Source of the DNA: Entomortierella parvispora E1425
Lineage: Eukaryota; Fungi; Mortierellomycota
Direction: 5' to 3'
DNA length: 64,000 nt
NCBI GenBank assembly: GCA_020891255.1
Contig: BQFW01000016.1
Location: 1 to 64,000, forward strand
A program made the position numbers and the translations under genes. Numbering within the stretch: the first letter of the stretch is position 1; every line of letters begins with the position of its first letter. Shown piece by piece: positions 26,700 through 59,893 of this stretch. The notes beneath the pieces are model-generated. The model had not been told where the DNA came from. It saw only the letters and a program-made list of their open reading frames with translations, and did no database searches.

Positions 26700-27250
26700 G
26701 TAAGAAAATGTGGCCATTTTCATACTGTAAGCTATTTTTTTATTCTTTTGTAGGTAATATCTCGATGAATAATGCTTCAATCTTCTTCCTTTTAGATTTG
26801 ATGGATGGGCACCATAGAGGAGAATGTATGATACAAGTTGTAGAACTCTAGGTAGTGAATTGCAGAAGCAATGGTGATGCATGTGTTTTTTTGCCAGTCA
26901 ATGGGGTCGGGCACATTTTTTTTTTGTTTGCGATACTTACCCTTTTGTGTTCAAGATACAGGCCTTCCAAGACTCCATTGCTCACAGGTATACGCAAATA
27001 CCCGCCATGGATGCTCTGTTGTGAGTATCTGGTTTCCCTCGCCCTTCTAGAGACAAGTCTGGGGTGTTTTTTTTTACAACAGCAAAAAAAAAAAGGGACT
27101 GAATGGTCTGGGCTATGTTTTTTTATTTGAACCTCCAACCCGCTCCTTATCCTTGATTCTCGTCCTTCTTCTCCTTGCCCTTCTTGGTGGGGGTCACTGC
27201 GTTGAGGGCCATTTAGATCATGTTCTGGCCCCTGTTAGCAACATCCCTTT
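26700..27250 (+). repeat. Duplicate of 30430-30950 (one ~250-bp unit plus the 3' end of the AT-hook gene)
   Basis: Near-identical TTTGCGATACTTACCC...GAGACAAGTCTGGGGTG...GCGTTGAGGGCC. Confidence 0.9.
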
Positions 27251-27309
27251 TTTTCATCACCCTTTTTTATCCCTCGATTTTTTTTTTGGACACACGATTT
27301 TACTGCCTT

Positions 27310-27345
27310 AAGGTTGGAACTTAAACTCATTTAAGTTCCAACCTT
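27310..27345. other. Perfect 16-bp hairpin with a 4-nt loop
   Basis: AAGGTTGGAACTTAAA-CTCA-TTTAAGTTCCAACCTT. Confidence 0.9.
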
Positions 27346-28472
27346 GAGATAGTTTGTTAGAATAGTTTCCATCCCCTTCATTTTTATCCCTAGCACATCT
27401 GGGGAGAGAGACAACTGCCTCTTTCTTTTGTTGAAAAACGTGTCTGGGGCATGCGAACTATGGGGTTTGATGAAGAGAATAGCTTCTAAAGTTGGGTGAT
27501 CTGCCCAAGTGTTATTTCACGCCTTGTGGCGGAAACAACACTGAGAATGAAGGTTGCTCCGCACATTGGCGAGCGGGAGAGATGATGGCGGACGTGTTAC
27601 AGAGGAGTGCAAGAGAGGCTGTTTTGCAATTCGATGTCTCTATGTCCGAAGCCTCGATCCAACACAATAGCAGGGCCCACATTTGGAGTTCAAAAGGGAG
27701 GGTGAAGAGAATGTGCGATGAGAAGAAGACACGTCATTATGTACTTCAACTACTCAAGAACAGCACCTTAGAGGAAGAAAACTATTCGAACTTTCTCCAC
27801 TAAGGTCATGAGCCTTGCGGCAATAAAGTCAAACCTTGGAGCAGTAAAATCTATACACCCATTTTTTTTATGTCTTGTTTCTTCGCTTTTTTTATGTATT
27901 GTTTTTCTGATCCCTTGCTCTTCCCACCAGATTTTTTTTGTATCCCTTGCTCTTTTTTCGATCTCTTAATTTGCTCATCTTTGACTTAAGTGTTGCCCTT
28001 GATTTGGCTGCCTTTGATTTAATTGCTCTTGAGTCTTGATCTTTTTCTTGCCTTGGTCTTCTCATCCCTCCATCTTTTTTCTCTTCTCTCTTTCCCCTGA
28101 TCCCCCCTTTTTTTGAAATCTTTCTTTGCCCTTGATCCCCCTTCTTTTTTGAAGTCTCTATCTGCCTTTGCATCTCTCCTCCCTTCTGCATCCCGTCCCT
28201 CATCTTGCCCGTTTCTCTTTTTCCGTCCTTCTCTCATCTTGCCCAAGTGGGATAATTGACCTAGATTCTTAAGTATATAAAGAAGCGCTACTTGTCCAGC
28301 ATCCGTATTTGATCCCACCTCAAGGCTCTGAAATCGCAACAGCACTCCTAACGCTCCAAGAACCATCGCAAGAGCCGCCACACAAACGATCCGTTGCACG
28401 ACCGTACAGACCAGTACCAAAAACGATTCTCTCCCAGAAACCGCCGCAAGATTGCCACATACCATCCCATTC

Positions 28473-28715
28473 ATGATGATTACTCTTCCTTTTGTCCTGG
28501 CTATCTTTTTGGCCAGCACCGTTCTTGCCGATGGAGTGTGCCCAGATTTCTTGTACTCAGTCCCCCAATGCTGTGGACCTAATACGTTGAACGTTGCAAG
28601 TCTTGACTGTAAGGCACCTTCATCTGCCGGGACATGTTCTGGTGGTGAACTACAGTGCTGTTCAGTACCTGCAGCGCAGCAAGGTGTTCTCTGCATCGAC
28701 CCCGTAGGCGCCTGA
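28473..28715 (+). CDS. Secreted 8-cysteine hydrophobin, class II (cerato-ulmin/HFBII)-like, 80 aa, intronless
   Basis: Signal-peptide-like MMITLPFVLAIFLASTVLA; C-x9-CC-x11-C-x8-C-x6-CC-x10-C; class II-like words VCP..LYS.PQCC, LDC..P and QGVLC..P.G; TATATAAA at 28274-28281. Confidence 0.85.
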   Translation: MMITLPFVLAIFLASTVLADGVCPDFLYSVPQCCGPNTLNVASLDCKAPSSAGTCSGGELQCCSVPAAQQGVLCIDPVGA

Positions 28716-29009
28716 GAATATATTCAAAGGAGTCCGCATACACACAGCCATCTTCCTCACCGACGATGCCACCTTGTGGGAGGGCAATGCCCTCTCTGAC
28801 GATGCCCCCTGGAATGACTTTGTCGACGCCTCCCGTGCTGCTTTCCAACCTACCGGATTCATCGACCAAATGCGCAACATGTTATTCGATATCAGGTGTA
28901 AAAGGAATACGGAGACATCACGCGATGTGCACCTATAAAAGATAGAAACTTGCAATATAAAAAAACTCAATTCTTGTGTCCATTCAGTCCCCCTGTCGGC
29001 CTATTGTAC

Positions 29010-29324
29010 TTTCGCGCCTTGCCACCAACTCTCGCGTCTTGCCGATGGCGTACTGATCATTTGAAGGAATTTGGGACCTGGTACCATGATCAGAATCCAG
29101 AGGACTATGACGTCAAGCTGGTTCCTCGTGCCAGAGCCTGGGTCCTACGTGCTAGAGCCTTGTAAACCCACAAAAAAAAAAGTTGGCCTCCCGTGCTAGA
29201 GCCCTGTAGATCTTGACCCATCATTTTCGGTGGCAAGTTCAGGACCTGGGACCCTGGTACCTTAGCTGTAGGTCGTCCCTACGTGTATCTTTCTAGTGAT
29301 GCCATTGGGAACCCGGTACCTTGG
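29010..29324 (+). repeat. Second copy of the ~320-bp direct repeat
   Basis: Matches 25790-26154. Confidence 0.9.
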
Positions 29325-29699
29325 CTGGAAAGAATCAAAGTACAGACAGTATCAATGGCGGAGAGAATCAAAGCAGAGTATCAAAGACGCGGCACGCTTG
29401 CATGCCGAACAAAAACAGAATAAAGAATCATGGTCCAATTTCCTTCTGTCGTAGCTCGTACGATGATAATTTCCGTAGCCAGAAGATGCAAGTCTCAACC
29501 CAATGGGACCGCAGAGTAATGGTGGTGCACGTGTCCGTTGCCAGCCATTCAGATGGACCAAACGGTAGTCGAAAGTATGTGGGTCCTAGAAGCATGTAAA
29601 TGGTACCCAGTAGACCTCTATGGACCCGCCATGTACTATGTGGTAGTCCCCTATAAGAAATAATATACCCACCTTTGTTTTCTTTGGTGGACGATAGCT

Positions 29700-37971: not shown

Positions 37972-40225
37972 GTGGTGAAAAGAAAAGTTGATCACTTCCT
38001 CGCACATGGATGCCCCGCCCGTTGCTTCGATATCTGGAAGGACAGCATCAAGAAGGACCATTCTAAAACTCTATTGACTTCTGCCATGGATTTCGTGCTG
38101 AAGTTCGCACGGCCAGAAATCGAACGAGCCAGCCATACCATGAATATTGGGCTCCCTGCCACTGCAGTAACCGGGGAAGCTCTGGAACAGTTCCGCCTCG
38201 AAAATATCCTGCGAGAAATGGAGGGGCATGCCCCCATATCCCTAGCCTTGCTGCGTGGTCTCATAAACGACAAGAGGCTTTCACCTTTCGAACCAGAAAT
38301 CCCCGCCGTCCCTGTAGTCGCCAGTGTCGTCCTCAGGACGTGGAATAGACGGGCAAATTTCCTCCAAGGTATCTTCAGTCTCTACTTTTATAGCCAGGGT
38401 GCTACAAAGTCGTTGGTCAGTGTTCTCCAAAGAGCTGGACTCAGCAATAGCTTTGACTGGATTATGGAGGGCTTGGATCATCTGACCACGGCACATTTAG
38501 AAAAAATCCAGTCAATTTTGAAGGACAGGAAACAACCGTTCATGATTGTGTACGATAACATCAACATGGCATTTCGGCGCTACAATCAGAGAACGACAAA
38601 CAAAGATTCATTCGAAAATGGTGCCACAGCGACGGCAATTCTCACTTCTGAGATGCCTGCTGTTGAAGGGGTGCAAGATGCCACGAGGCATATACGTGCC
38701 TCCGATTTGTACCCCTCCAAAGAACAGGACAGTCATTTGAAGGAAACATACCGTTATCATCTGATTGAGGCGCTGCGAAGACGAGGAACCATATCTCTCA
38801 AAAACCCTATTCCTGAGCCAGTCAAGAACAAACTCAAAGTGGAGAGAACCAAAGCTTACCCACTTCCATCCATGCACATTGACCAGTCAACCGTGGAAGG
38901 CAACAGGGATATTCTTGACAAGATCATGAAGGTGCTTCAGCTTTCGCCAGAGACTTTCTTTGATCAGACGCGTCTTGTTGTTGCAGGAGATCAACTCACC
39001 TTGGCCAGAATACGAAGTGTAGCAAGATTACGATGGGATGAGGACTTGGCGTACTACCGTGTGGAATGGGCAATCCCTGTCCTTCAACTTTTTCATCTTC
39101 AGATGGTTCTGGCATCAACAATTTTGAAGACGCACTGGGGCACTCGAACAACACCTGGATCGCTCAGCTCCTTCGTCGCGGCCTTGGAAAAAAAGCGGAT
39201 CAGCCCAGACAAGTCTAGTTTCCATGATCTTGATGAATTTCTTCGCCATGTTTTTGATGCCATAGTCTTGCTCATTTGGGAAATCAAGCTCAAGAGTGAA
39301 GAGGAATTGTCCAGCAAGTCCTCCGGACAGATGCCTCACTCATCAATGGATGTCATGGATAAGGTTGACGGTATCATCGGCCAATATTTGACAGCAACAG
39401 GCCTTGGTGGCATGGCAAATCAGCAGTCAGTCAACGCCGCGTTGTTCATTCGGGACATGCTGTTCTACATTGAGCTGGGATCAGCGATCAAAGCAGGGGA
39501 TATAGGGCGAATTCTGGAGATGATCCGATGGCTTACCTTGACCTTTCAAGCTGGAGGCAATAGAAACTACGCAAATGAGCTTCTACGACTTCACTGTGGC
39601 CTCTTTTATTCTTGGAAGACAGAGGATAGGAATACCATATTATCCTCGATGCTAGTTAATACTACTGGACAACCAAACAGATGGATACCCACCGACCTTT
39701 ATCAAGAGCACAACAATCTTCTTACAAAAATCAGACACGCGGCAAAAGTCCAGCAATCTGAACTGGGGTATTTTAGAGAAAAAAATTGCGCCAAACGTTC
39801 GCACGTTCCAGGAGATTGCGAGGACGGTCGAGAAAATGTTCAAAACGCCTCATTGTGGAACCAACCACTCAGCTCCATCCTCTGTGGCGGACATCGATAT
39901 AATTAAGCAGCGGTGCATCGAGGCTGGCTTTTTCACGCATGACGATATATCTCCTGATCTTGTGGTTCCTGCTGTGAGAGATCTTTTGGCAGAGGGACGC
40001 AATAATATTGTAGATAAGCGTCGAATTGCTGTTTTCAAGAAATGCTGTGGTCGCTATTGTAATGAAGACGCTGGTGAGATGGATGTCGAGATGGAGGAGG
40101 AGGAGGAAGATGCTGAGATGGACGAGGAACGCCCTACAATTGCTGATGATGAAGCACTAGAGTTTCCTGAATTCGACATCTCACAATTCGACCTGGACGA
40201 GTTCGTTGAAAATAACTTTTGTTAA
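37972..40225 (+). CDS. Academ/DUF6589-like DDE transposase; one frameshift near 39745; true start probably further upstream
   Basis: IVYDNIN (D), VAGDQLT (D), LFHL, GGNRNYANE, RWIPTDLYQEHNN (E); the frame continues SNLNWGILEKKIAPNV..MFKTPHCG into 39836-40225. Confidence 0.8.
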
Positions 40226-41224: not shown

Positions 41225-42808
41225 TCAAAGGAGGAATTTGAAAAGATGGGGCCATTCCAAATTGCCGCCGTCGCTCCTTTTCTTGGCGATTTTTTTTTCC
41301 TTCTCGTCCTTCTCCTCCAAGAATTGCTTGCCCAAACCCATGATGATCTCTAGCACCTGGCTTGGATATGTTTCATTCAGTGGGTCCCAGTATAGCATGT
41401 CGATTGATCTGGCAGCAATTATACTCTTGTACTTCTTGACGGTCTTGTTTAACATGTAGTCGGTCATGACCGTTTGTTCTGTGTCGTGCATGCGGCCCTT
41501 AAAGTGCAAGTCATACATATTATCCCTCCATACTATCAGCGCATTCCGGACTTGTTCCGCCTCATTCTTATCCCATTTCTCTCGTTTCGATGCCTTGTCT
41601 GCTGGCTGAATTGTTGACGACTCGTCCTTGTCATCAGCTTCATCCGGATTGCAGATATTGCAGCACACGTCCGTAACTGGGACGTGCTCGTTCCCGTAGT
41701 AATCGTTAAAATACTTTCGGATACATCCAGGAGAGTTCGCTAGGTCAATAAGGTCTTTAAGATCTTGCTGAACGGGATCTTTTTTTTTGGGGGTAACTTT
41801 TGGTGCCGATTTTGGGACCAAAAATATACCGTATCCTTGGATTGTGCCGTCCCTTGCAGCTCGTCCAAATCGCTGAAAAAGACAATTTATATCCCGAGGG
41901 TAGCCATACTGGACAACACGAGCGATATCCCTAATGTCACATCCCATACCTGCGGCTTCCGTTGCTAGCAAAATAGGATATTTGCCTTCACGGAACTCCT
42001 TCATGCGACGATTCTTGAGATCATCGGTTTTGAAACCATGATACACCCGAACTTGTTCTTGGCCGAACCAAGTGCGTAGAAGGTGTCCAGCTTGCTCTGC
42101 TAAATCCCGGTTGTCGAAATAAACGATGGTCTTGGCCTTGTCCTTCAAGAAAAGGAGATCTTTAAATGATGATACGGCCTCCTTAAATGAAGTGACCTTG
42201 TACATGATATTGGGTCGATCGTTACCGATGTTGATGATAGTCGGGTTCATCATGTCCAGTGATAGTATTGTAGTCTTCAAAATTGATCTGGGAAGTGTAG
42301 CCGAGGCAGCTATGAAAGGTGCTCGATTGTTTAGCCTGTAGCGCAACTTAGCAAGCTCCCCAAAAGCGTGGCGAAATGACGATCCCCAGGCGTGGATGCA
42401 ATGGGCTTCATCAACAACAACAGCGCGTATGCTTTCAGCCCATTTGCTGTTTTCCCAAAGACCCTTTAATCGTTTGGATTCAAGAAGCATCTCTGGAGAT
42501 AGAAAAATTGCCCGATATCCACCTTGGAGGACTTTGGAGGCGTTGATATCCTTATCATCCTCCGTGATACTGACACATTCGATGTTGAGATTCTTGAGCT
42601 TGTCTCTTTGTTCGATGCCAAGAGCCTTAAGAGGTGTTATTACAAGGATGGCAGCGTCACTCCACAGAAATAGTGGAAGAGTGAAGGCCAGAGTTTTTCC
42701 CCAACCTGTGGGGGCAATTAAGACGCAATCTCTCCGATCAATAATGGATCGGAGAACGTCCAATCTGCTCGGGCTTGGGGATGACGCCGAGTTTGTCTTC
42801 GCAGACAC
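41225..42808 (-). CDS. RecQ-like superfamily 2 helicase (527 aa)
   Basis: APTGWGKT, VVVDEAH, SAT, LATEAAGMGCD, QRFGRAARDG, and a Zn-binding-like CIRKYF..CCNIC. Confidence 0.92.
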   Translation of the reverse strand: MSAKTNSASSPSPSRLDVLRSIIDRRDCVLIAPTGWGKTLAFTLPLFLWSDAAILVITPLKALGIEQRDKLKNLNIECVSITEDDKDINASKVLQGGYRAIFLSPEMLLESKRLKGLWENSKWAESIRAVVVDEAHCIHAWGSSFRHAFGELAKLRYRLNNRAPFIAASATLPRSILKTTILSLDMMNPTIINIGNDRPNIMYKVTSFKEAVSSFKDLLFLKDKAKTIVYFDNRDLAEQAGHLLRTWFGQEQVRVYHGFKTDDLKNRRMKEFREGKYPILLATEAAGMGCDIRDIARVVQYGYPRDINCLFQRFGRAARDGTIQGYGIFLVPKSAPKVTPKKKDPVQQDLKDLIDLANSPGCIRKYFNDYYGNEHVPVTDVCCNICNPDEADDKDESSTIQPADKASKREKWDKNEAEQVRNALIVWRDNMYDLHFKGRMHDTEQTVMTDYMLNKTVKKYKSIIAARSIDMLYWDPLNETYPSQVLEIIMGLGKQFLEEKDEKEKKIAKKRSDGGNLEWPHLFKFLL

Positions 42809-59098: not shown

Positions 59099-59497
59099 AC
59101 AAATCTGTAGAACAATGGGCTTAATCTCAGCAGCTCGTATCAACAAGGATACTCGTCTGCTTACAATACCCCGTTCAATTAAAGTCGTCTGCAATGGATT
59201 TATCTCTTCCAATATTTGAAATTAACATTAGCAGGAGCCTCATAAAGCCTTTCCGCTCTACAAGACCACCCCACGTAATATGATTCAGGAGCCGAAGCTC
59301 TATTCGTATTCAACTAAAAATCGGAAAAGGCGGTAATCGTCGCGTTCTAGCACGGATTCTGACTTAGAGGCGTTCAGCCATAATCCAACGGATGATAGCT
59401 TCGGGCCATTGCCTGCTCAGGCAGGCCCAAATACCAATTATCCGAATAAAGTGTTCCTCTCGTACTAACTTTAATTACTATTGCAACAACATTTCAT

Positions 59498-59552
<55 letters not shown>

Positions 59553-59596
59553 ATTAGTGGGTGAACAATCCAACGCTTACTGAATTCTGCTTCAGT

Positions 59597-59632
<36 letters not shown>

Positions 59633-59672
59633 AACGTCGCTATGAACGCTTGGCTGCCACAAGCCAGTTATC
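59099..59672 (-). rRNA. Isolated 3' fragment of nuclear LSU (25S/28S) rRNA, 574 nt, followed by about 45 nt of 3' ETS-like sequence
   Basis: Minus strand reads GATAACTGGCTTGTGGCAGCCAAGCGTTCATAGCGACGTTGC..AGGGAACGTGAGCTGGGTTTAGACCGTCGTGAGACAGGTTAG..AGTACGAGAGGAAC (sarcin-ricin loop)..GATTTGT; the rest of the gene is absent. Confidence 0.97.
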
Positions 59673-59893
59673 ATACCAATATATAACTTTGTTTCTACCT
59701 TGAAAGTCAAATATGTGGTGACTATCGAGGATCCGGAGATCCGAAAAGCTCAAAACATGTTCGTAGTGCACTTTACTTATAGGTTTTGGAAGAAAAAACC
59801 ATGACATCATAATTTTTTTTTTTTGAAAAAAAAATTCGCACCTAGGAGCAAAAAAAAAAAAAAAAGATGGCCAGTAAGGGATGATATTAGGAC

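What the first reader, a model, noticed from the sequence alone, without database searches (positions are those of the whole stretch)
28274..28715. Intact, intronless class II-like hydrophobin in an apparently non-Dikarya genome
Seen: signal peptide, eight cysteines spaced 9-CC-11-C-8-C-6-CC-10-C, a TATA box about 200 bp upstream, and no disruption although neighbouring genes are decayed. Known: class II hydrophobins (HFBI/II, cerato-ulmin) are regarded as Ascomycota proteins, usually have introns, and have about 16 residues between C4 and C5, which form the alpha helix. Here that loop is only 8 residues. Inference: horizontal transfer from an ascomycete carried in mobile DNA, or an unrecognised Mucoromycota hydrophobin subclass lacking the helix.
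Basis: partly seen in the sequence, partly recalled or inferred. Interest (0 to 1): 0.75.

Follow-up and report, generated by a model that had tools for sequence, protein, structure and literature searches.

The report
Helix-less mosaic hydrophobin gene in Entomortierella
This is a real, intact but unannotated gene for a small secreted water-repellent coat protein (class II hydrophobin) in the non-Dikarya soil fungus Entomortierella parvispora. Such genes were already reported in this fungal family in 2018, so what is new is that this copy lacks the usual helix and looks like a patchwork of two hydrophobin lineages.

Summary
The ORF at 28473-28715 (+) encodes an 80-aa protein with a signal peptide and eight Cys spaced 9-CC-11-C-8-C-6-CC-10. 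It scores 45 bits on Pfam PF06766 (cut-off 24). The host is Entomortierella parvispora (Mortierellaceae), so it is not a Dikarya species. A Logan contig from what is probably the strain's own short-read run confirms the sequence at single-copy depth.

- A class II hydrophobin in Mortierella elongata was published in 2018.
- This scan already found two other copies in this genome (s1-185093, s1-176370).
- The gene shares its promoter, TATA box, leader, signal peptide and last 10 codons with the family's 'hydrophobin 5'. That gene is conserved in Linnemannia, Podila and E. lignicola.
- Codons 35-70 are unlike hydrophobin 5 (48% nt identity). They match a Hypocreales-type lineage at protein level.
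- The closest relative is an intron-bearing, ascomycete-type gene with the same 8-residue loop (about 81% aa identity, no gaps). Its synonymous sites are saturated against ours.

So the short loop is neither a local accident nor specific to Mucoromycota. The gene is best read as a recombinant of a resident 5' module and an old, ascomycete-like helix-less core. Expression and surface activity were not tested.

The parts
27986..28272 (+). CT-rich upstream (promoter) region homologous to the region upstream of Linnemannia elongata 'hydrophobin 5'
   Evidence: blastn matches window 27986-28574 to L016:2324-3042 at 74-93% identity, in three pieces. Three-species alignment A5. About 72% identity to L. 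elongata upstream of the TATA box.
28273..28282 (+). TATA box (GTATATAAAG), 200 bp before the ATG
   Evidence: Read directly. TATATAAAG is invariant in E. parvispora, L. elongata and E. lignicola in alignment A5.
28283..28472 (+). Conserved leader (putative 5'UTR) of the L. elongata/Podila type
   Evidence: 88% identity to L. elongata, 81% to Podila and 74% to E. lignicola over the 200 nt before the ATG. The upstream in-frame ATG used in Podila and the JGI orthologue is ATC here.
28473..28715 (+). Complete intronless CDS (80 codons plus TGA) of a class II hydrophobin
   Evidence: ORF list. PF06766 at 45.3 bits. PDB matches to HFBI, HFBII and NC2. Confirmed base for base by an independent short-read contig. 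The exact protein is absent from the public protein collection, so it is unannotated.
28473..28529 (+). Signal peptide (residues 1-19), the module shared by all Mortierellaceae class II hydrophobins seen
   Evidence: It aligns with hyd5 of L. elongata, Podila, E. lignicola and a JGI contig, and with E. parvispora paralogues C15, C5 and C8. Over codons 1-34 (signal peptide plus N-terminus) DNA identity to hyd5 is 81-85%, and 22 of 23 third positions are identical at conserved residues. The cleavage site is inferred, not predicted with a tool.
28530..28712 (+). Mature domain (61 aa) with eight Cys
   Evidence: AF2 model of this part has mean pLDDT 70.8 and shows strands only, no helix. The top Foldseek hits are HFBI, HFBII and NC2, with TM 0.61-0.71 and probability 0.99-1.0.
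28575..28682 (+). Divergent core (codons 35-70), unlike hyd5 and like the Hypocreales-type lineage
   Evidence: 48% nt identity to hyd5 against 85% in codons 1-34. 66% nt identity and 27/36 aa identical to the Pochonia protein. The maximum chi-square test places the high-difference segment at CDS sites 99-206, with 0 of 200 permutations reaching it.
28611..28634 (+). C4-C5 loop, 8 residues (KAPSSAGT) in place of the 15-16 that form the alpha-helix
   Evidence: Read directly. There are 8-residue gaps against HFBI and HFBII and a 7-residue gap against Pochonia and Mycena. The same length and a similar residual motif occur in L028 exon 2 (KTPSSDGS) and in paralogue C15 (KAPSADG).
28683..28726 (+). 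Last 10 codons, stop codon and 11 nt of 3' flank, again homologous to hyd5
   Evidence: blastn to L016:3178-3221 at 77% and to L017:888-932 at 82%. Beyond this point there is no homology to the well conserved hyd5 downstream region (42-48%).
28741..29330 (.). Repeat-derived DNA (decayed retroelement pieces) starting 26 nt after the stop. It replaces the native 3' flank.
   Evidence: A search of the host genome finds many copies on C4, C5, C8, C11, C12, C15, C16 and C18 for 28741 onward. In contrast, 27350-28740 is unique in the genome. Read depth jumps from 85 to more than 1000.

Best explanation
The ORF is a genuine single-copy gene of Entomortierella parvispora. It encodes a secreted, minimal class II hydrophobin with a 61-aa mature domain.

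It is a recombinant gene.
- Its promoter, TATA box, leader, signal peptide, first ~34 codons and last 10 codons are the local counterpart of the Mortierellaceae 'hydrophobin 5' locus.
- Codons 35-70 come from a different, helix-less class II lineage. The closest known members of that lineage are Hypocreales-type ascomycete genes.
- That core lineage is old in this fungus. Synonymous sites are saturated against every known relative, and a diverged short-loop paralogue sits on contig 15. If it came from an ascomycete, the transfer was ancient.

Inferred mode of action:
- After signal-peptide removal, the four disulfides lock a small beta-barrel.
- The two hairpin loops (C3-C4 and C7-C8) form the hydrophobic patch, which drives assembly into films at air-water or hydrophobic surfaces.
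- The helix that normally packs on the barrel between C4 and C5 is absent. Lateral packing and assembly kinetics should therefore differ from HFBI and HFBII.

Shown here: identity, host, gene structure, mosaic pattern and the short loop. Inferred: secretion, fold details and surface activity. Unknown: expression.
For: Identity:
- PF06766 above its cut-off.
- Sequence matches to HFBI, HFBII and NC2.
- The AF2 model plus Foldseek recover the class II fold without a helix.

Host and authenticity:
- HSP70 is 100% identical to E. parvispora.
- An independent short-read contig matches with 0 differences at single-copy depth.
- The flanks are host-specific repeats.

The 5' module is resident:
- 27986-28574 aligns to L. 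elongata hyd5 at 74-93%.
- The leader is 88% identical to L. elongata.
- 22 of 23 third positions are identical in codons 1-34.
- No other hyd5 copy exists in the genome.

The core differs:
- It is 48% nt identical to hyd5. For comparison, the hyd5 orthologues are 87% identical to each other in the same segment.
- The breakpoint test gives 0 of 200 permutations.
- The AU test rejects a clade of this gene plus hyd5 (p = 5e-5) and a clade of all Mortierellaceae copies (p = 5e-4).

Affinity of the core:
- 74% aa identity to Pochonia and 68% to Mycena.
- 48 of 59 compared codons (81%) are identical, without gaps, to L028. L028 has an ascomycete-type signal peptide, an intron where Pochonia has its phase-1 intron, and a promoter alignable to the Pochonia locus.

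The relationship is old:
- Third positions match at only 18/48 against L028, 11/27 against Pochonia and 15/44 against Mycena.
- Paralogue C15 shares the short loop, and a sister relationship with it is not rejected (p = 0.16).
Against: - No expression evidence. The second run of the same sample (X5, library type unknown) has no contig on the CDS. The gene was also not called in the RNA-guided public annotation.
- The native 3' flank is replaced by repeats 26 nt after the stop.
- The gene sits on a 125-kb repeat-rich contig among decayed ORFs.
- The donor of the core was not found, either in this genome or in metagenomes.
- At the 11 core residues shared with hyd5, 8 third positions agree. This could be shared codon bias, or a hint of divergence in place.
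- The trees rest on 69 columns and most forks are unresolved.
- The groups for the AU tests were named after sequence comparisons had been seen.
- The AF2 model is only of moderate confidence.
Confidence: 0.6

Rival explanations
1. Whole-gene, fairly recent horizontal transfer from an ascomycete, carried in by mobile DNA.
For: - The closest full-length proteins are ascomycete or Mycena proteins.
- The gene lies in a repeat-rich region.
- Class II hydrophobin transfer between fungi has a reported precedent: cerato-ulmin between Ophiostoma and Geosmithia (PMC5856884, listed; the details rest on my own knowledge).
Against: - Promoter, leader, signal peptide and both CDS ends are Mortierellaceae hyd5 DNA.
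- Synonymous sites are saturated against all ascomycete relatives.
- There is no ascomycete-type signal peptide and no intron remnant.
- No transposon boundaries enclose the gene. The 1.4-kb island is unique and merely abuts repeats.
Confidence: 0.05
2. No recombination. The gene is an old paralogue of hydrophobin 5 from a single ancient acquisition, and its core diverged (or hyd5's core diverged) in place. The conserved leader and signal peptide reflect strong nucleotide-level constraint, and the likeness to ascomycete short-loop genes is retained ancestry.
For: - The signal-peptide module is conserved at DNA level even in the old paralogues C5, C15 and C8.
- Third positions in it almost never change in any comparison. 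This points to constraint or concerted evolution.
- 8 of 11 third positions agree with hyd5 in the core.
Against: - Paralogues C5 and C15 share only 51-60 nt of signal-peptide DNA with hyd5 or with our gene, not the leader or promoter. Our gene shares about 490 bp of non-coding DNA at orthologue-like identity.
- The core type and the hyd5 type each have their own ascomycete relatives.
- The AU tests reject Mortierellaceae monophyly.
- There is a sharp breakpoint.
Confidence: 0.2
3. The ORF is a non-functional relic, a silent recombinant copy stranded in subtelomere-like repeats that happens still to be open. This concerns function, not origin, so it overlaps the other readings.
For: - It is unannotated.
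- There is no transcript evidence.
- The 3' flank is lost to repeats.
- The neighbouring ORFs are decayed or transposon-like.
- A fourth copy on C8 is clearly decayed.
- Almost all of the 15 nt differences from L. elongata hyd5 in codons 1-34 are non-synonymous.
Against: - All eight Cys, the reading frame, the TATA box and the leader are intact.
- The loop difference is in frame and is shared with an intact ascomycete-type gene of identical spacing.
- The core shows long-term purifying selection: 81% aa identity with saturated synonymous sites.
Confidence: 0.25
4. Contaminant DNA or a chimeric assembly.
For: C16 is a small (125 kb), repeat-rich contig from a Nanopore assembly.
Against: - A short-read contig spans 27211-28805 into the repeats on both sides, at single-copy depth and with 0 differences.
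- The 5' module is Mortierellaceae DNA.
- The flanking repeats recur on many contigs of the same genome.
Confidence: 0.02

Closest known systems
'Hydrophobin 5' of Linnemannia (Mortierella) elongata AG-77 (P0184) and its orthologues in Podila minutissima, Entomortierella lignicola and a JGI soil contig. This is the 'putative group 2 hydrophobin' of Ahrendt et al. 2018.
   Same: - Promoter, TATA box, leader, signal peptide, first ~34 and last 10 codons are homologous at DNA level.
- Intronless.
- Mortierellaceae host.
- Sits on repeat-rich or short contigs.
   Different: - Codons 35-70 are only 48% nt and about 30% aa identical.
- The hyd5 loop is 15 residues and C5-C6 is 8 residues, against 8 and 6 here.
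- The hyd5 3' flank is conserved between genera but missing here.
Hypocreales-type class II hydrophobins: Pochonia chlamydosporia P0001, Conoideocrella P0189 and the unnamed Logan contig L028.
   Same: - The mature domain is 74% identical to Pochonia and about 81% identical to L028.
- L028 has the identical Cys spacing 9-11-8-6-10 and a similar residual loop motif.
   Different: - They have an ascomycete signal peptide and pro-region (MKSF...QAR).
- They have an intron inside the C4-C5 loop codons (phase 1 in Pochonia).
- Pochonia keeps the 15-residue helix loop.
- DNA identity is only 61-68%, with saturated synonymous sites.
HFBI and HFBII of Trichoderma reesei and NC2 of Neurospora crassa (solved class II structures 2FZ6, 1R2M, 4AOG).
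   Same: - Same family by sequence (E 1e-6 to 3e-4) and by predicted fold (TM 0.61-0.71).
- Same eight-Cys framework.
- The hairpin loops that form the hydrophobic patch are present.
   Different: - The single alpha-helix between C4 and C5 has no room here (8 against 16 residues).
- Patch positions are less hydrophobic (for example T, A, S where HFBII has V, I, G/V).
- The mature protein is 61 aa, against 70-75 aa.
Other natural short-loop class II hydrophobins in databases: Dactylellina cionopaga 'Hydrophobin-2' (P0130, 9-11-8-6-10), Penicillium sp. (P0136, loop of 7) and E. parvispora paralogue C15 (loop of 7).
   Same: A C4-C5 loop too short for a helix, with all Cys kept.
   Different: Only 44-46% identical to this protein. 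They may be independent deletions. None has been characterised, as far as my searches show.
Cerato-ulmin transfer between Ophiostoma novo-ulmi and Geosmithia (PMC5856884).
   Same: A precedent for a class II hydrophobin gene moving between fungi.
   Different: That case is recent, nearly identical in DNA and within Ascomycota. Here only the core is foreign-like and the signal is old.

Membership tests
Class II hydrophobin (Pfam PF06766, Hydrophobin_2) | Significant match to the family profile over its full length | tested here: met
   45.3 bits against a cut-off of 24, E 8.4e-12, profile positions 1-65 of 65. The own-genome scan gives 41.3 bits.
Class II hydrophobin (Pfam PF06766, Hydrophobin_2) | Eight Cys in the order C-CC-C-C-CC-C | tested here: met
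   Read directly from the translation. All eight align with the invariant Cys columns of 44 and 66 homologues.
Class II hydrophobin (Pfam PF06766, Hydrophobin_2) | Canonical spacing C-X9-10-CC-X11-C-X16-C-X6-9-CC-X10-C | tested here: not met
   Every interval is canonical except C4-C5, which is 8 residues. In nearly all homologues examined it is 15-16.
Class II hydrophobin (Pfam PF06766, Hydrophobin_2) | Four-stranded beta-barrel flanked by one alpha-helix (HFBI/HFBII/NC2 fold; PMC12375992) | tested here: inconclusive
   The AF2 model of the mature domain (pLDDT 70.8) is most similar to HFBI, HFBII and NC2 (TM 0.61-0.71). It has no helix, and an 8-residue loop cannot form one. The barrel is supported at moderate confidence and the helix is absent.
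Class II hydrophobin (Pfam PF06766, Hydrophobin_2) | N-terminal secretion signal on a small protein (about 70-100 aa) | tested here: inconclusive
   There is a 19-residue hydrophobic N-terminus homologous to the signal peptides of annotated Mortierellaceae hydrophobins. No signal-peptide predictor was available.
Class II hydrophobin (Pfam PF06766, Hydrophobin_2) | Surface activity and self-assembly into films that dissolve in ethanol/SDS | not testable with these tools
   This needs purified protein.
Mortierellaceae 'hydrophobin 5' orthogroup | Orthologous promoter, leader and signal peptide | tested here: met
   74-93% DNA identity over 27986-28574 to L016. The leader is 88% identical to L. 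elongata and 81% to Podila. There is no other hyd5 copy in the genome.
Mortierellaceae 'hydrophobin 5' orthogroup | Conserved mature core (78-89% aa identity among Linnemannia, Podila, E. lignicola and a JGI contig) and conserved 3' flank | tested here: not met
   The core is 48% nt identical and 10-11 of 36 residues match. The AU test rejects a clade with hyd5 (p = 5e-5). The downstream 300 nt are 42-48% identical, against 81-89% among the three named genera.

The most novel reading that the evidence does not exclude
One conserved Mortierellaceae leader and signal-peptide module has repeatedly been joined to cores from different ascomycete-type class II hydrophobin lineages:
- the hyd5 core groups with Penicillium solitum and Dactylellina 'Cryparin';
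- the C16 core groups with the Hypocreales short-loop type;
- the C5 core groups with Aphanocladium.

This would mean repeated cross-phylum transfer, fixed by homologous 'cassette' replacement at resident hydrophobin loci. The hyd5 locus itself may also be moving between Mortierellaceae species. A further consequence would be that helix-less class II hydrophobins form a functional structural subclass shared across phyla.
Probability: 0.2. Interest if true: 0.7.

Novelty: new variant of a known kind. Interest (0 to 1): 0.42.

Why it matters
- **For hydrophobin structure and function.** A natural, intact 61-residue class II hydrophobin without the helix tests what the helix is for. The same spacing occurs in an ascomycete-type gene, a second paralogue and two database proteins. 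Engineered deletions in the C4-C5 loop are reported to delay assembly (PMC12375992). It could also serve as a minimal scaffold for coatings and emulsifiers.
- **For fungal evolution.** It adds detail to the little-studied presence of class II hydrophobins outside Dikarya. The family in Mortierellaceae has at least four loci in one genome, all unannotated. All share one signal-peptide module, yet their cores do not form one clade. That pattern suggests recombination and old inter-phylum exchange rather than simple inheritance.
- **For annotation.** Three intact hydrophobin genes are missing from the public gene set of this genome.

Tried and rejected
- **Metagenome scans.** Two scans for relatives, one with the single protein and one with the four-protein alignment A4, found nothing.
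- **Full-length AF2 model.** It was poor (pLDDT 60.6) and I did not use it. The mature-domain model replaced it.
- **Mis-splicing idea.** I tested whether the loop deletion came from a mis-spliced retro-copy. The Pochonia intron is phase 1 in the Pro codon right after C4-K-T, four to five codons upstream of the missing residues. L028 has both the intron and the short loop. I rejected the idea.
- **Insertion into an LSU-bearing repeat unit.** I looked for a co-linear repeat unit that would show this. The flanks are a patchwork of repeats, so no conclusion is possible.
- **Expression.** Run X5 from the same sample has no contig on the CDS. Its library type is unknown, and poly(A) loose ends also occur in the DNA run. 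I drew no inference from it.
- **Recent donor.** DNA identity to Pochonia, Mycena and L028 is only 61-68%, with random third positions.
- **Synteny.** Apart from the hydrophobin itself, the L. elongata hyd5 scaffold matched the genome only at repeats or short pieces on other contigs, so there is no synteny.
- **Class I hydrophobins.** A PF01185 search of the genome found nothing, but the control genomes cannot validate that search.
- **Spliced sequences.** The Pochonia CDS was joined from its two annotated exons only inside a script, for codon comparison. L028 was compared exon by exon.
Full report
**What is there.**
On the + strand an ATG at 28473, followed directly by a second ATG, opens an 80-codon frame that ends with TGA at 28713-28715. 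The product has a 19-residue hydrophobic N-terminus and eight Cys spaced C-9-CC-11-C-8-C-6-CC-10-C. It matches Pfam PF06766 (class II hydrophobin) over the whole profile at 45.3 bits, against a cut-off of 24. In the PDB it matches by sequence only HFBI, HFBII and NC2, each with a gap where their helix lies. A TATA box (GTATATAAAG) lies at 28273-28282.

**Host and authenticity.**
- The genome has 38.9 Mb in 20 contigs.
- Its cytosolic HSP70 exon is 100% identical to the NCBI protein of Entomortierella parvispora and 90-94% identical to other Mortierellaceae. Size, contig number and GC roughly fit the published E1425 assembly (PMC8759367). The host is therefore a Mucoromycota fungus.
- The window is the first half of a 125-kb repeat-rich contig.
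- The stretch 27350-28740 is unique in the genome, while both sides are repeats found on many contigs.
- A Logan contig from run X1, probably the strain's own DNA run, covers 27211-28805 with no differences at depth 84.8. That equals the depth of other unique pieces. The short loop is therefore not a Nanopore error, and the gene is neither a contaminant nor a chimera.

**What is already known.**
- Ahrendt et al. [quoted passage not shown] A later survey repeats this (bioRxiv 10.1101/2022.08.19.504535).
- That protein is annotated 'hydrophobin 5' in Linnemannia elongata AG-77. It has 78-89% identical orthologues in Podila minutissima, E. lignicola and a JGI soil contig. All are intronless.
- The E. 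parvispora genome holds four PF06766 loci. One on C5 has canonical spacing. One on C15 has a 7-residue loop. One on C8 has lost the CC pair and has a frameshift. The fourth is the gene studied here.
- None of the three intact ORFs is in the public protein collection.
- This scan had already noted the C5 and C15 copies. An earlier follow-up on one of them reached the same general conclusion.

**The gene is a mosaic.**
- Window 27986-28574 aligns to the L. elongata hyd5 locus (L016:2324-3042) at 74-93% identity. The aligned stretch covers the CT-rich promoter, the invariant TATA box, the leader, the signal peptide and the first ~34 codons.
- The leader is 88% identical to L. elongata and 81% to Podila.
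- In codons 1-34, 22 of 23 third positions at conserved residues are identical to L. elongata.
- Homology returns for the last 10 codons plus 11 nt.
- In between, codons 35-70 are 48% nt identical to hyd5. The hyd5 orthologues are 87% identical to each other in the same segment.
- A maximum chi-square scan puts the high-difference block at CDS sites 99-206: 51% differences against 18% elsewhere, with 0 of 200 permutations reaching it.
- The genome has no second hyd5 copy and no other sequence like the core.
- The native hyd5 downstream flank is 81-89% conserved among the three named genera. Here it is replaced by retroelement debris 26 nt after the stop.

**Where the core belongs.**
- The word-based search and the exhaustive representative search both give ascomycete-type proteins as nearest relatives: Pochonia chlamydosporia (74%), Mycena leptocephala (68%) and Verticillium albo-atrum (54%).
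- On the mature domain, the gene groups with Pochonia, Verticillium, Mycena and Penicillium (support 81/87). The hyd5 orthologues form a separate clade with Penicillium solitum and Dactylellina 'Cryparin' (99/99).
- AU tests reject a clade of this gene plus hyd5 (p = 5e-5) and a single Mortierellaceae clade (p = 5e-4). The alignment has only 69 columns and the groups were named after I had seen the sequences, so I treat this as supportive rather than final.
- The most informative relative is a Logan contig (L028).
  - Its first exon has a Clavicipitaceae-like signal peptide.
  - Its promoter aligns to the Pochonia locus (68% over 768 nt).
  - It has an intron at the same point as Pochonia's phase-1 intron.
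  - Its second exon continues with an 8-residue loop.
  - Its spacing is therefore identical to ours (9-11-8-6-10), the residual loop motif is similar, and 48 of the 59 compared codons are identical without gaps.
- The helix-less form therefore exists in an ascomycete-type gene with ascomycete gene structure. The short loop was most likely inherited with the core rather than made in E. parvispora.
- Short loops also occur in Dactylellina cionopaga 'Hydrophobin-2' (same spacing) and in a Penicillium species.

**Age.**
Third positions at identical residues match at chance level against L028 (18/48), Pochonia (11/27 in the core) and Mycena (15/44). The relationship is therefore old, or the true donor is unsampled. 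Paralogue C15 shares KAPS, the short loop and the family signal peptide but is only 45% identical. A sister relationship with it is not rejected (p = 0.16). This fits a short-loop lineage long resident in this fungus, one member of which recombined with the hyd5 5' module. I could not tell that apart from a direct foreign source for the core.

**Structure and likely function.**
- An AF2 model of the mature domain, built from 66 aligned homologues, reaches pLDDT 70.8 and contains strands only.
- Its best structural matches are HFBI, HFBII and NC2 (TM 0.61-0.71, probability 0.99-1.0).
- The class II fold is described as a four-stranded barrel flanked by one helix, with the hydrophobic face lined by the C1-C2, C3-C4 and C7-C8 loops. 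Deletions in the C4-C5 loop are reported to delay self-assembly (PMC12375992).
- I infer a secreted amphiphile that still forms the barrel and the patch but packs differently in films.
- The patch positions carry T, A and S where HFBII has larger hydrophobic residues, as in its Pochonia-type relatives.

**Is it active?**
- For: the frame, all Cys, the TATA box and the leader are intact, and the core shows long-term purifying selection.
- Against: no transcript evidence, no call in an RNA-guided annotation, a lost 3' flank, a junk-rich neighbourhood, and mostly non-synonymous changes in codons 1-34 relative to hyd5.
- I put function at about even odds.

**Verdict.**
This is a new variant of a known kind: a helix-less, recombinant member of the already reported Mortierellaceae class II hydrophobins. 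Three things remain unexplained and worth following:
- All Mortierellaceae copies share one signal-peptide module while their cores are not one clade.
- The hyd5 locus is far better conserved in non-coding DNA between genera than the HSP70 locus, whose flanks do not align at all.
- Our leader is of the Linnemannia/Podila type rather than the E. lignicola type.

Noticed in passing
window 59101-59707 (-); also L016:1808-1939 and L001:806-876: The LSU rRNA 3' fragment is a dispersed repeat of about 620 bp with more than 40 copies on at least 9 contigs, not part of an rDNA unit here. A 70-130-nt piece of it lies about 1 kb upstream of L. elongata hyd5 and about 550 bp upstream of the E. parvispora C5 hydrophobin (93% identity). 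With about 40 copies in 39 Mb, that is unlikely by chance.
   Followed up: partly
L016, L017, L026, L027 (hyd5 loci of L. elongata, E. lignicola, Podila and a JGI contig): The hyd5 locus is unusually conserved between genera. The CDS is 88-93% identical, the 300 nt downstream are 81-89% identical among the three named genera (68-75% to the JGI contig), and the leader is 70-93% identical. The leader falls into two types that do not follow the genus names. In contrast, the HSP70 locus of E. parvispora and L. elongata aligns only in the coding exon. This could be constraint, paralogy or movement between species.
   Followed up: partly
L018:4001-4417 (Dactylellina cionopaga 'Cryparin', P0143): This Orbiliomycete protein is 83% identical to Mortierellaceae hyd5 and falls inside that clade in the tree, with weak support. 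Monophyly of the Mortierellaceae copies without it is not rejected (p = 0.18). Its gene has introns and an ascomycete signal peptide. It may be another cross-phylum exchange.
   Followed up: partly
L020:2351-2728 (Mycena leptocephala, P0002): A basidiomycete carries an intronless class II hydrophobin of the same subgroup. The annotated start looks too far downstream: the frame stays open upstream and gives an MKSF-type signal peptide.
   Followed up: partly
L004:1380-1629 (G000:C8, about 2982335-2982583): The fourth PF06766 locus is a decayed paralogue. It has the family signal peptide, has lost the CC pair, and has a frameshift before the C-terminal half.
   Followed up: partly
L001:1429-1710 (C5) and L003:1495-1734 (C15, minus strand): Two more intact, intronless class II hydrophobin ORFs in this genome, one with the canonical 16-residue loop and one with a 7-residue loop. 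Both are absent from the public protein set. C5 pairs with Aphanocladium album in the tree (95/86).
   Followed up: partly
window 37972-39906 (+) and 41225-42808 (-): A DUF6589 ORF (305 bits) and a DEAD/Helicase_C ORF lie 9-14 kb downstream. The other long ORFs tested have no Pfam match. The window looks like subtelomere-type repeat DNA on a 125-kb contig.
   Followed up: no
G000, several contigs: There are 37 HSP70-family matches. They include two near-identical mitochondrial-type copies (C12, C4) and several full-length cytosolic-type copies, which suggests gene or segmental duplication in this genome.
   Followed up: no
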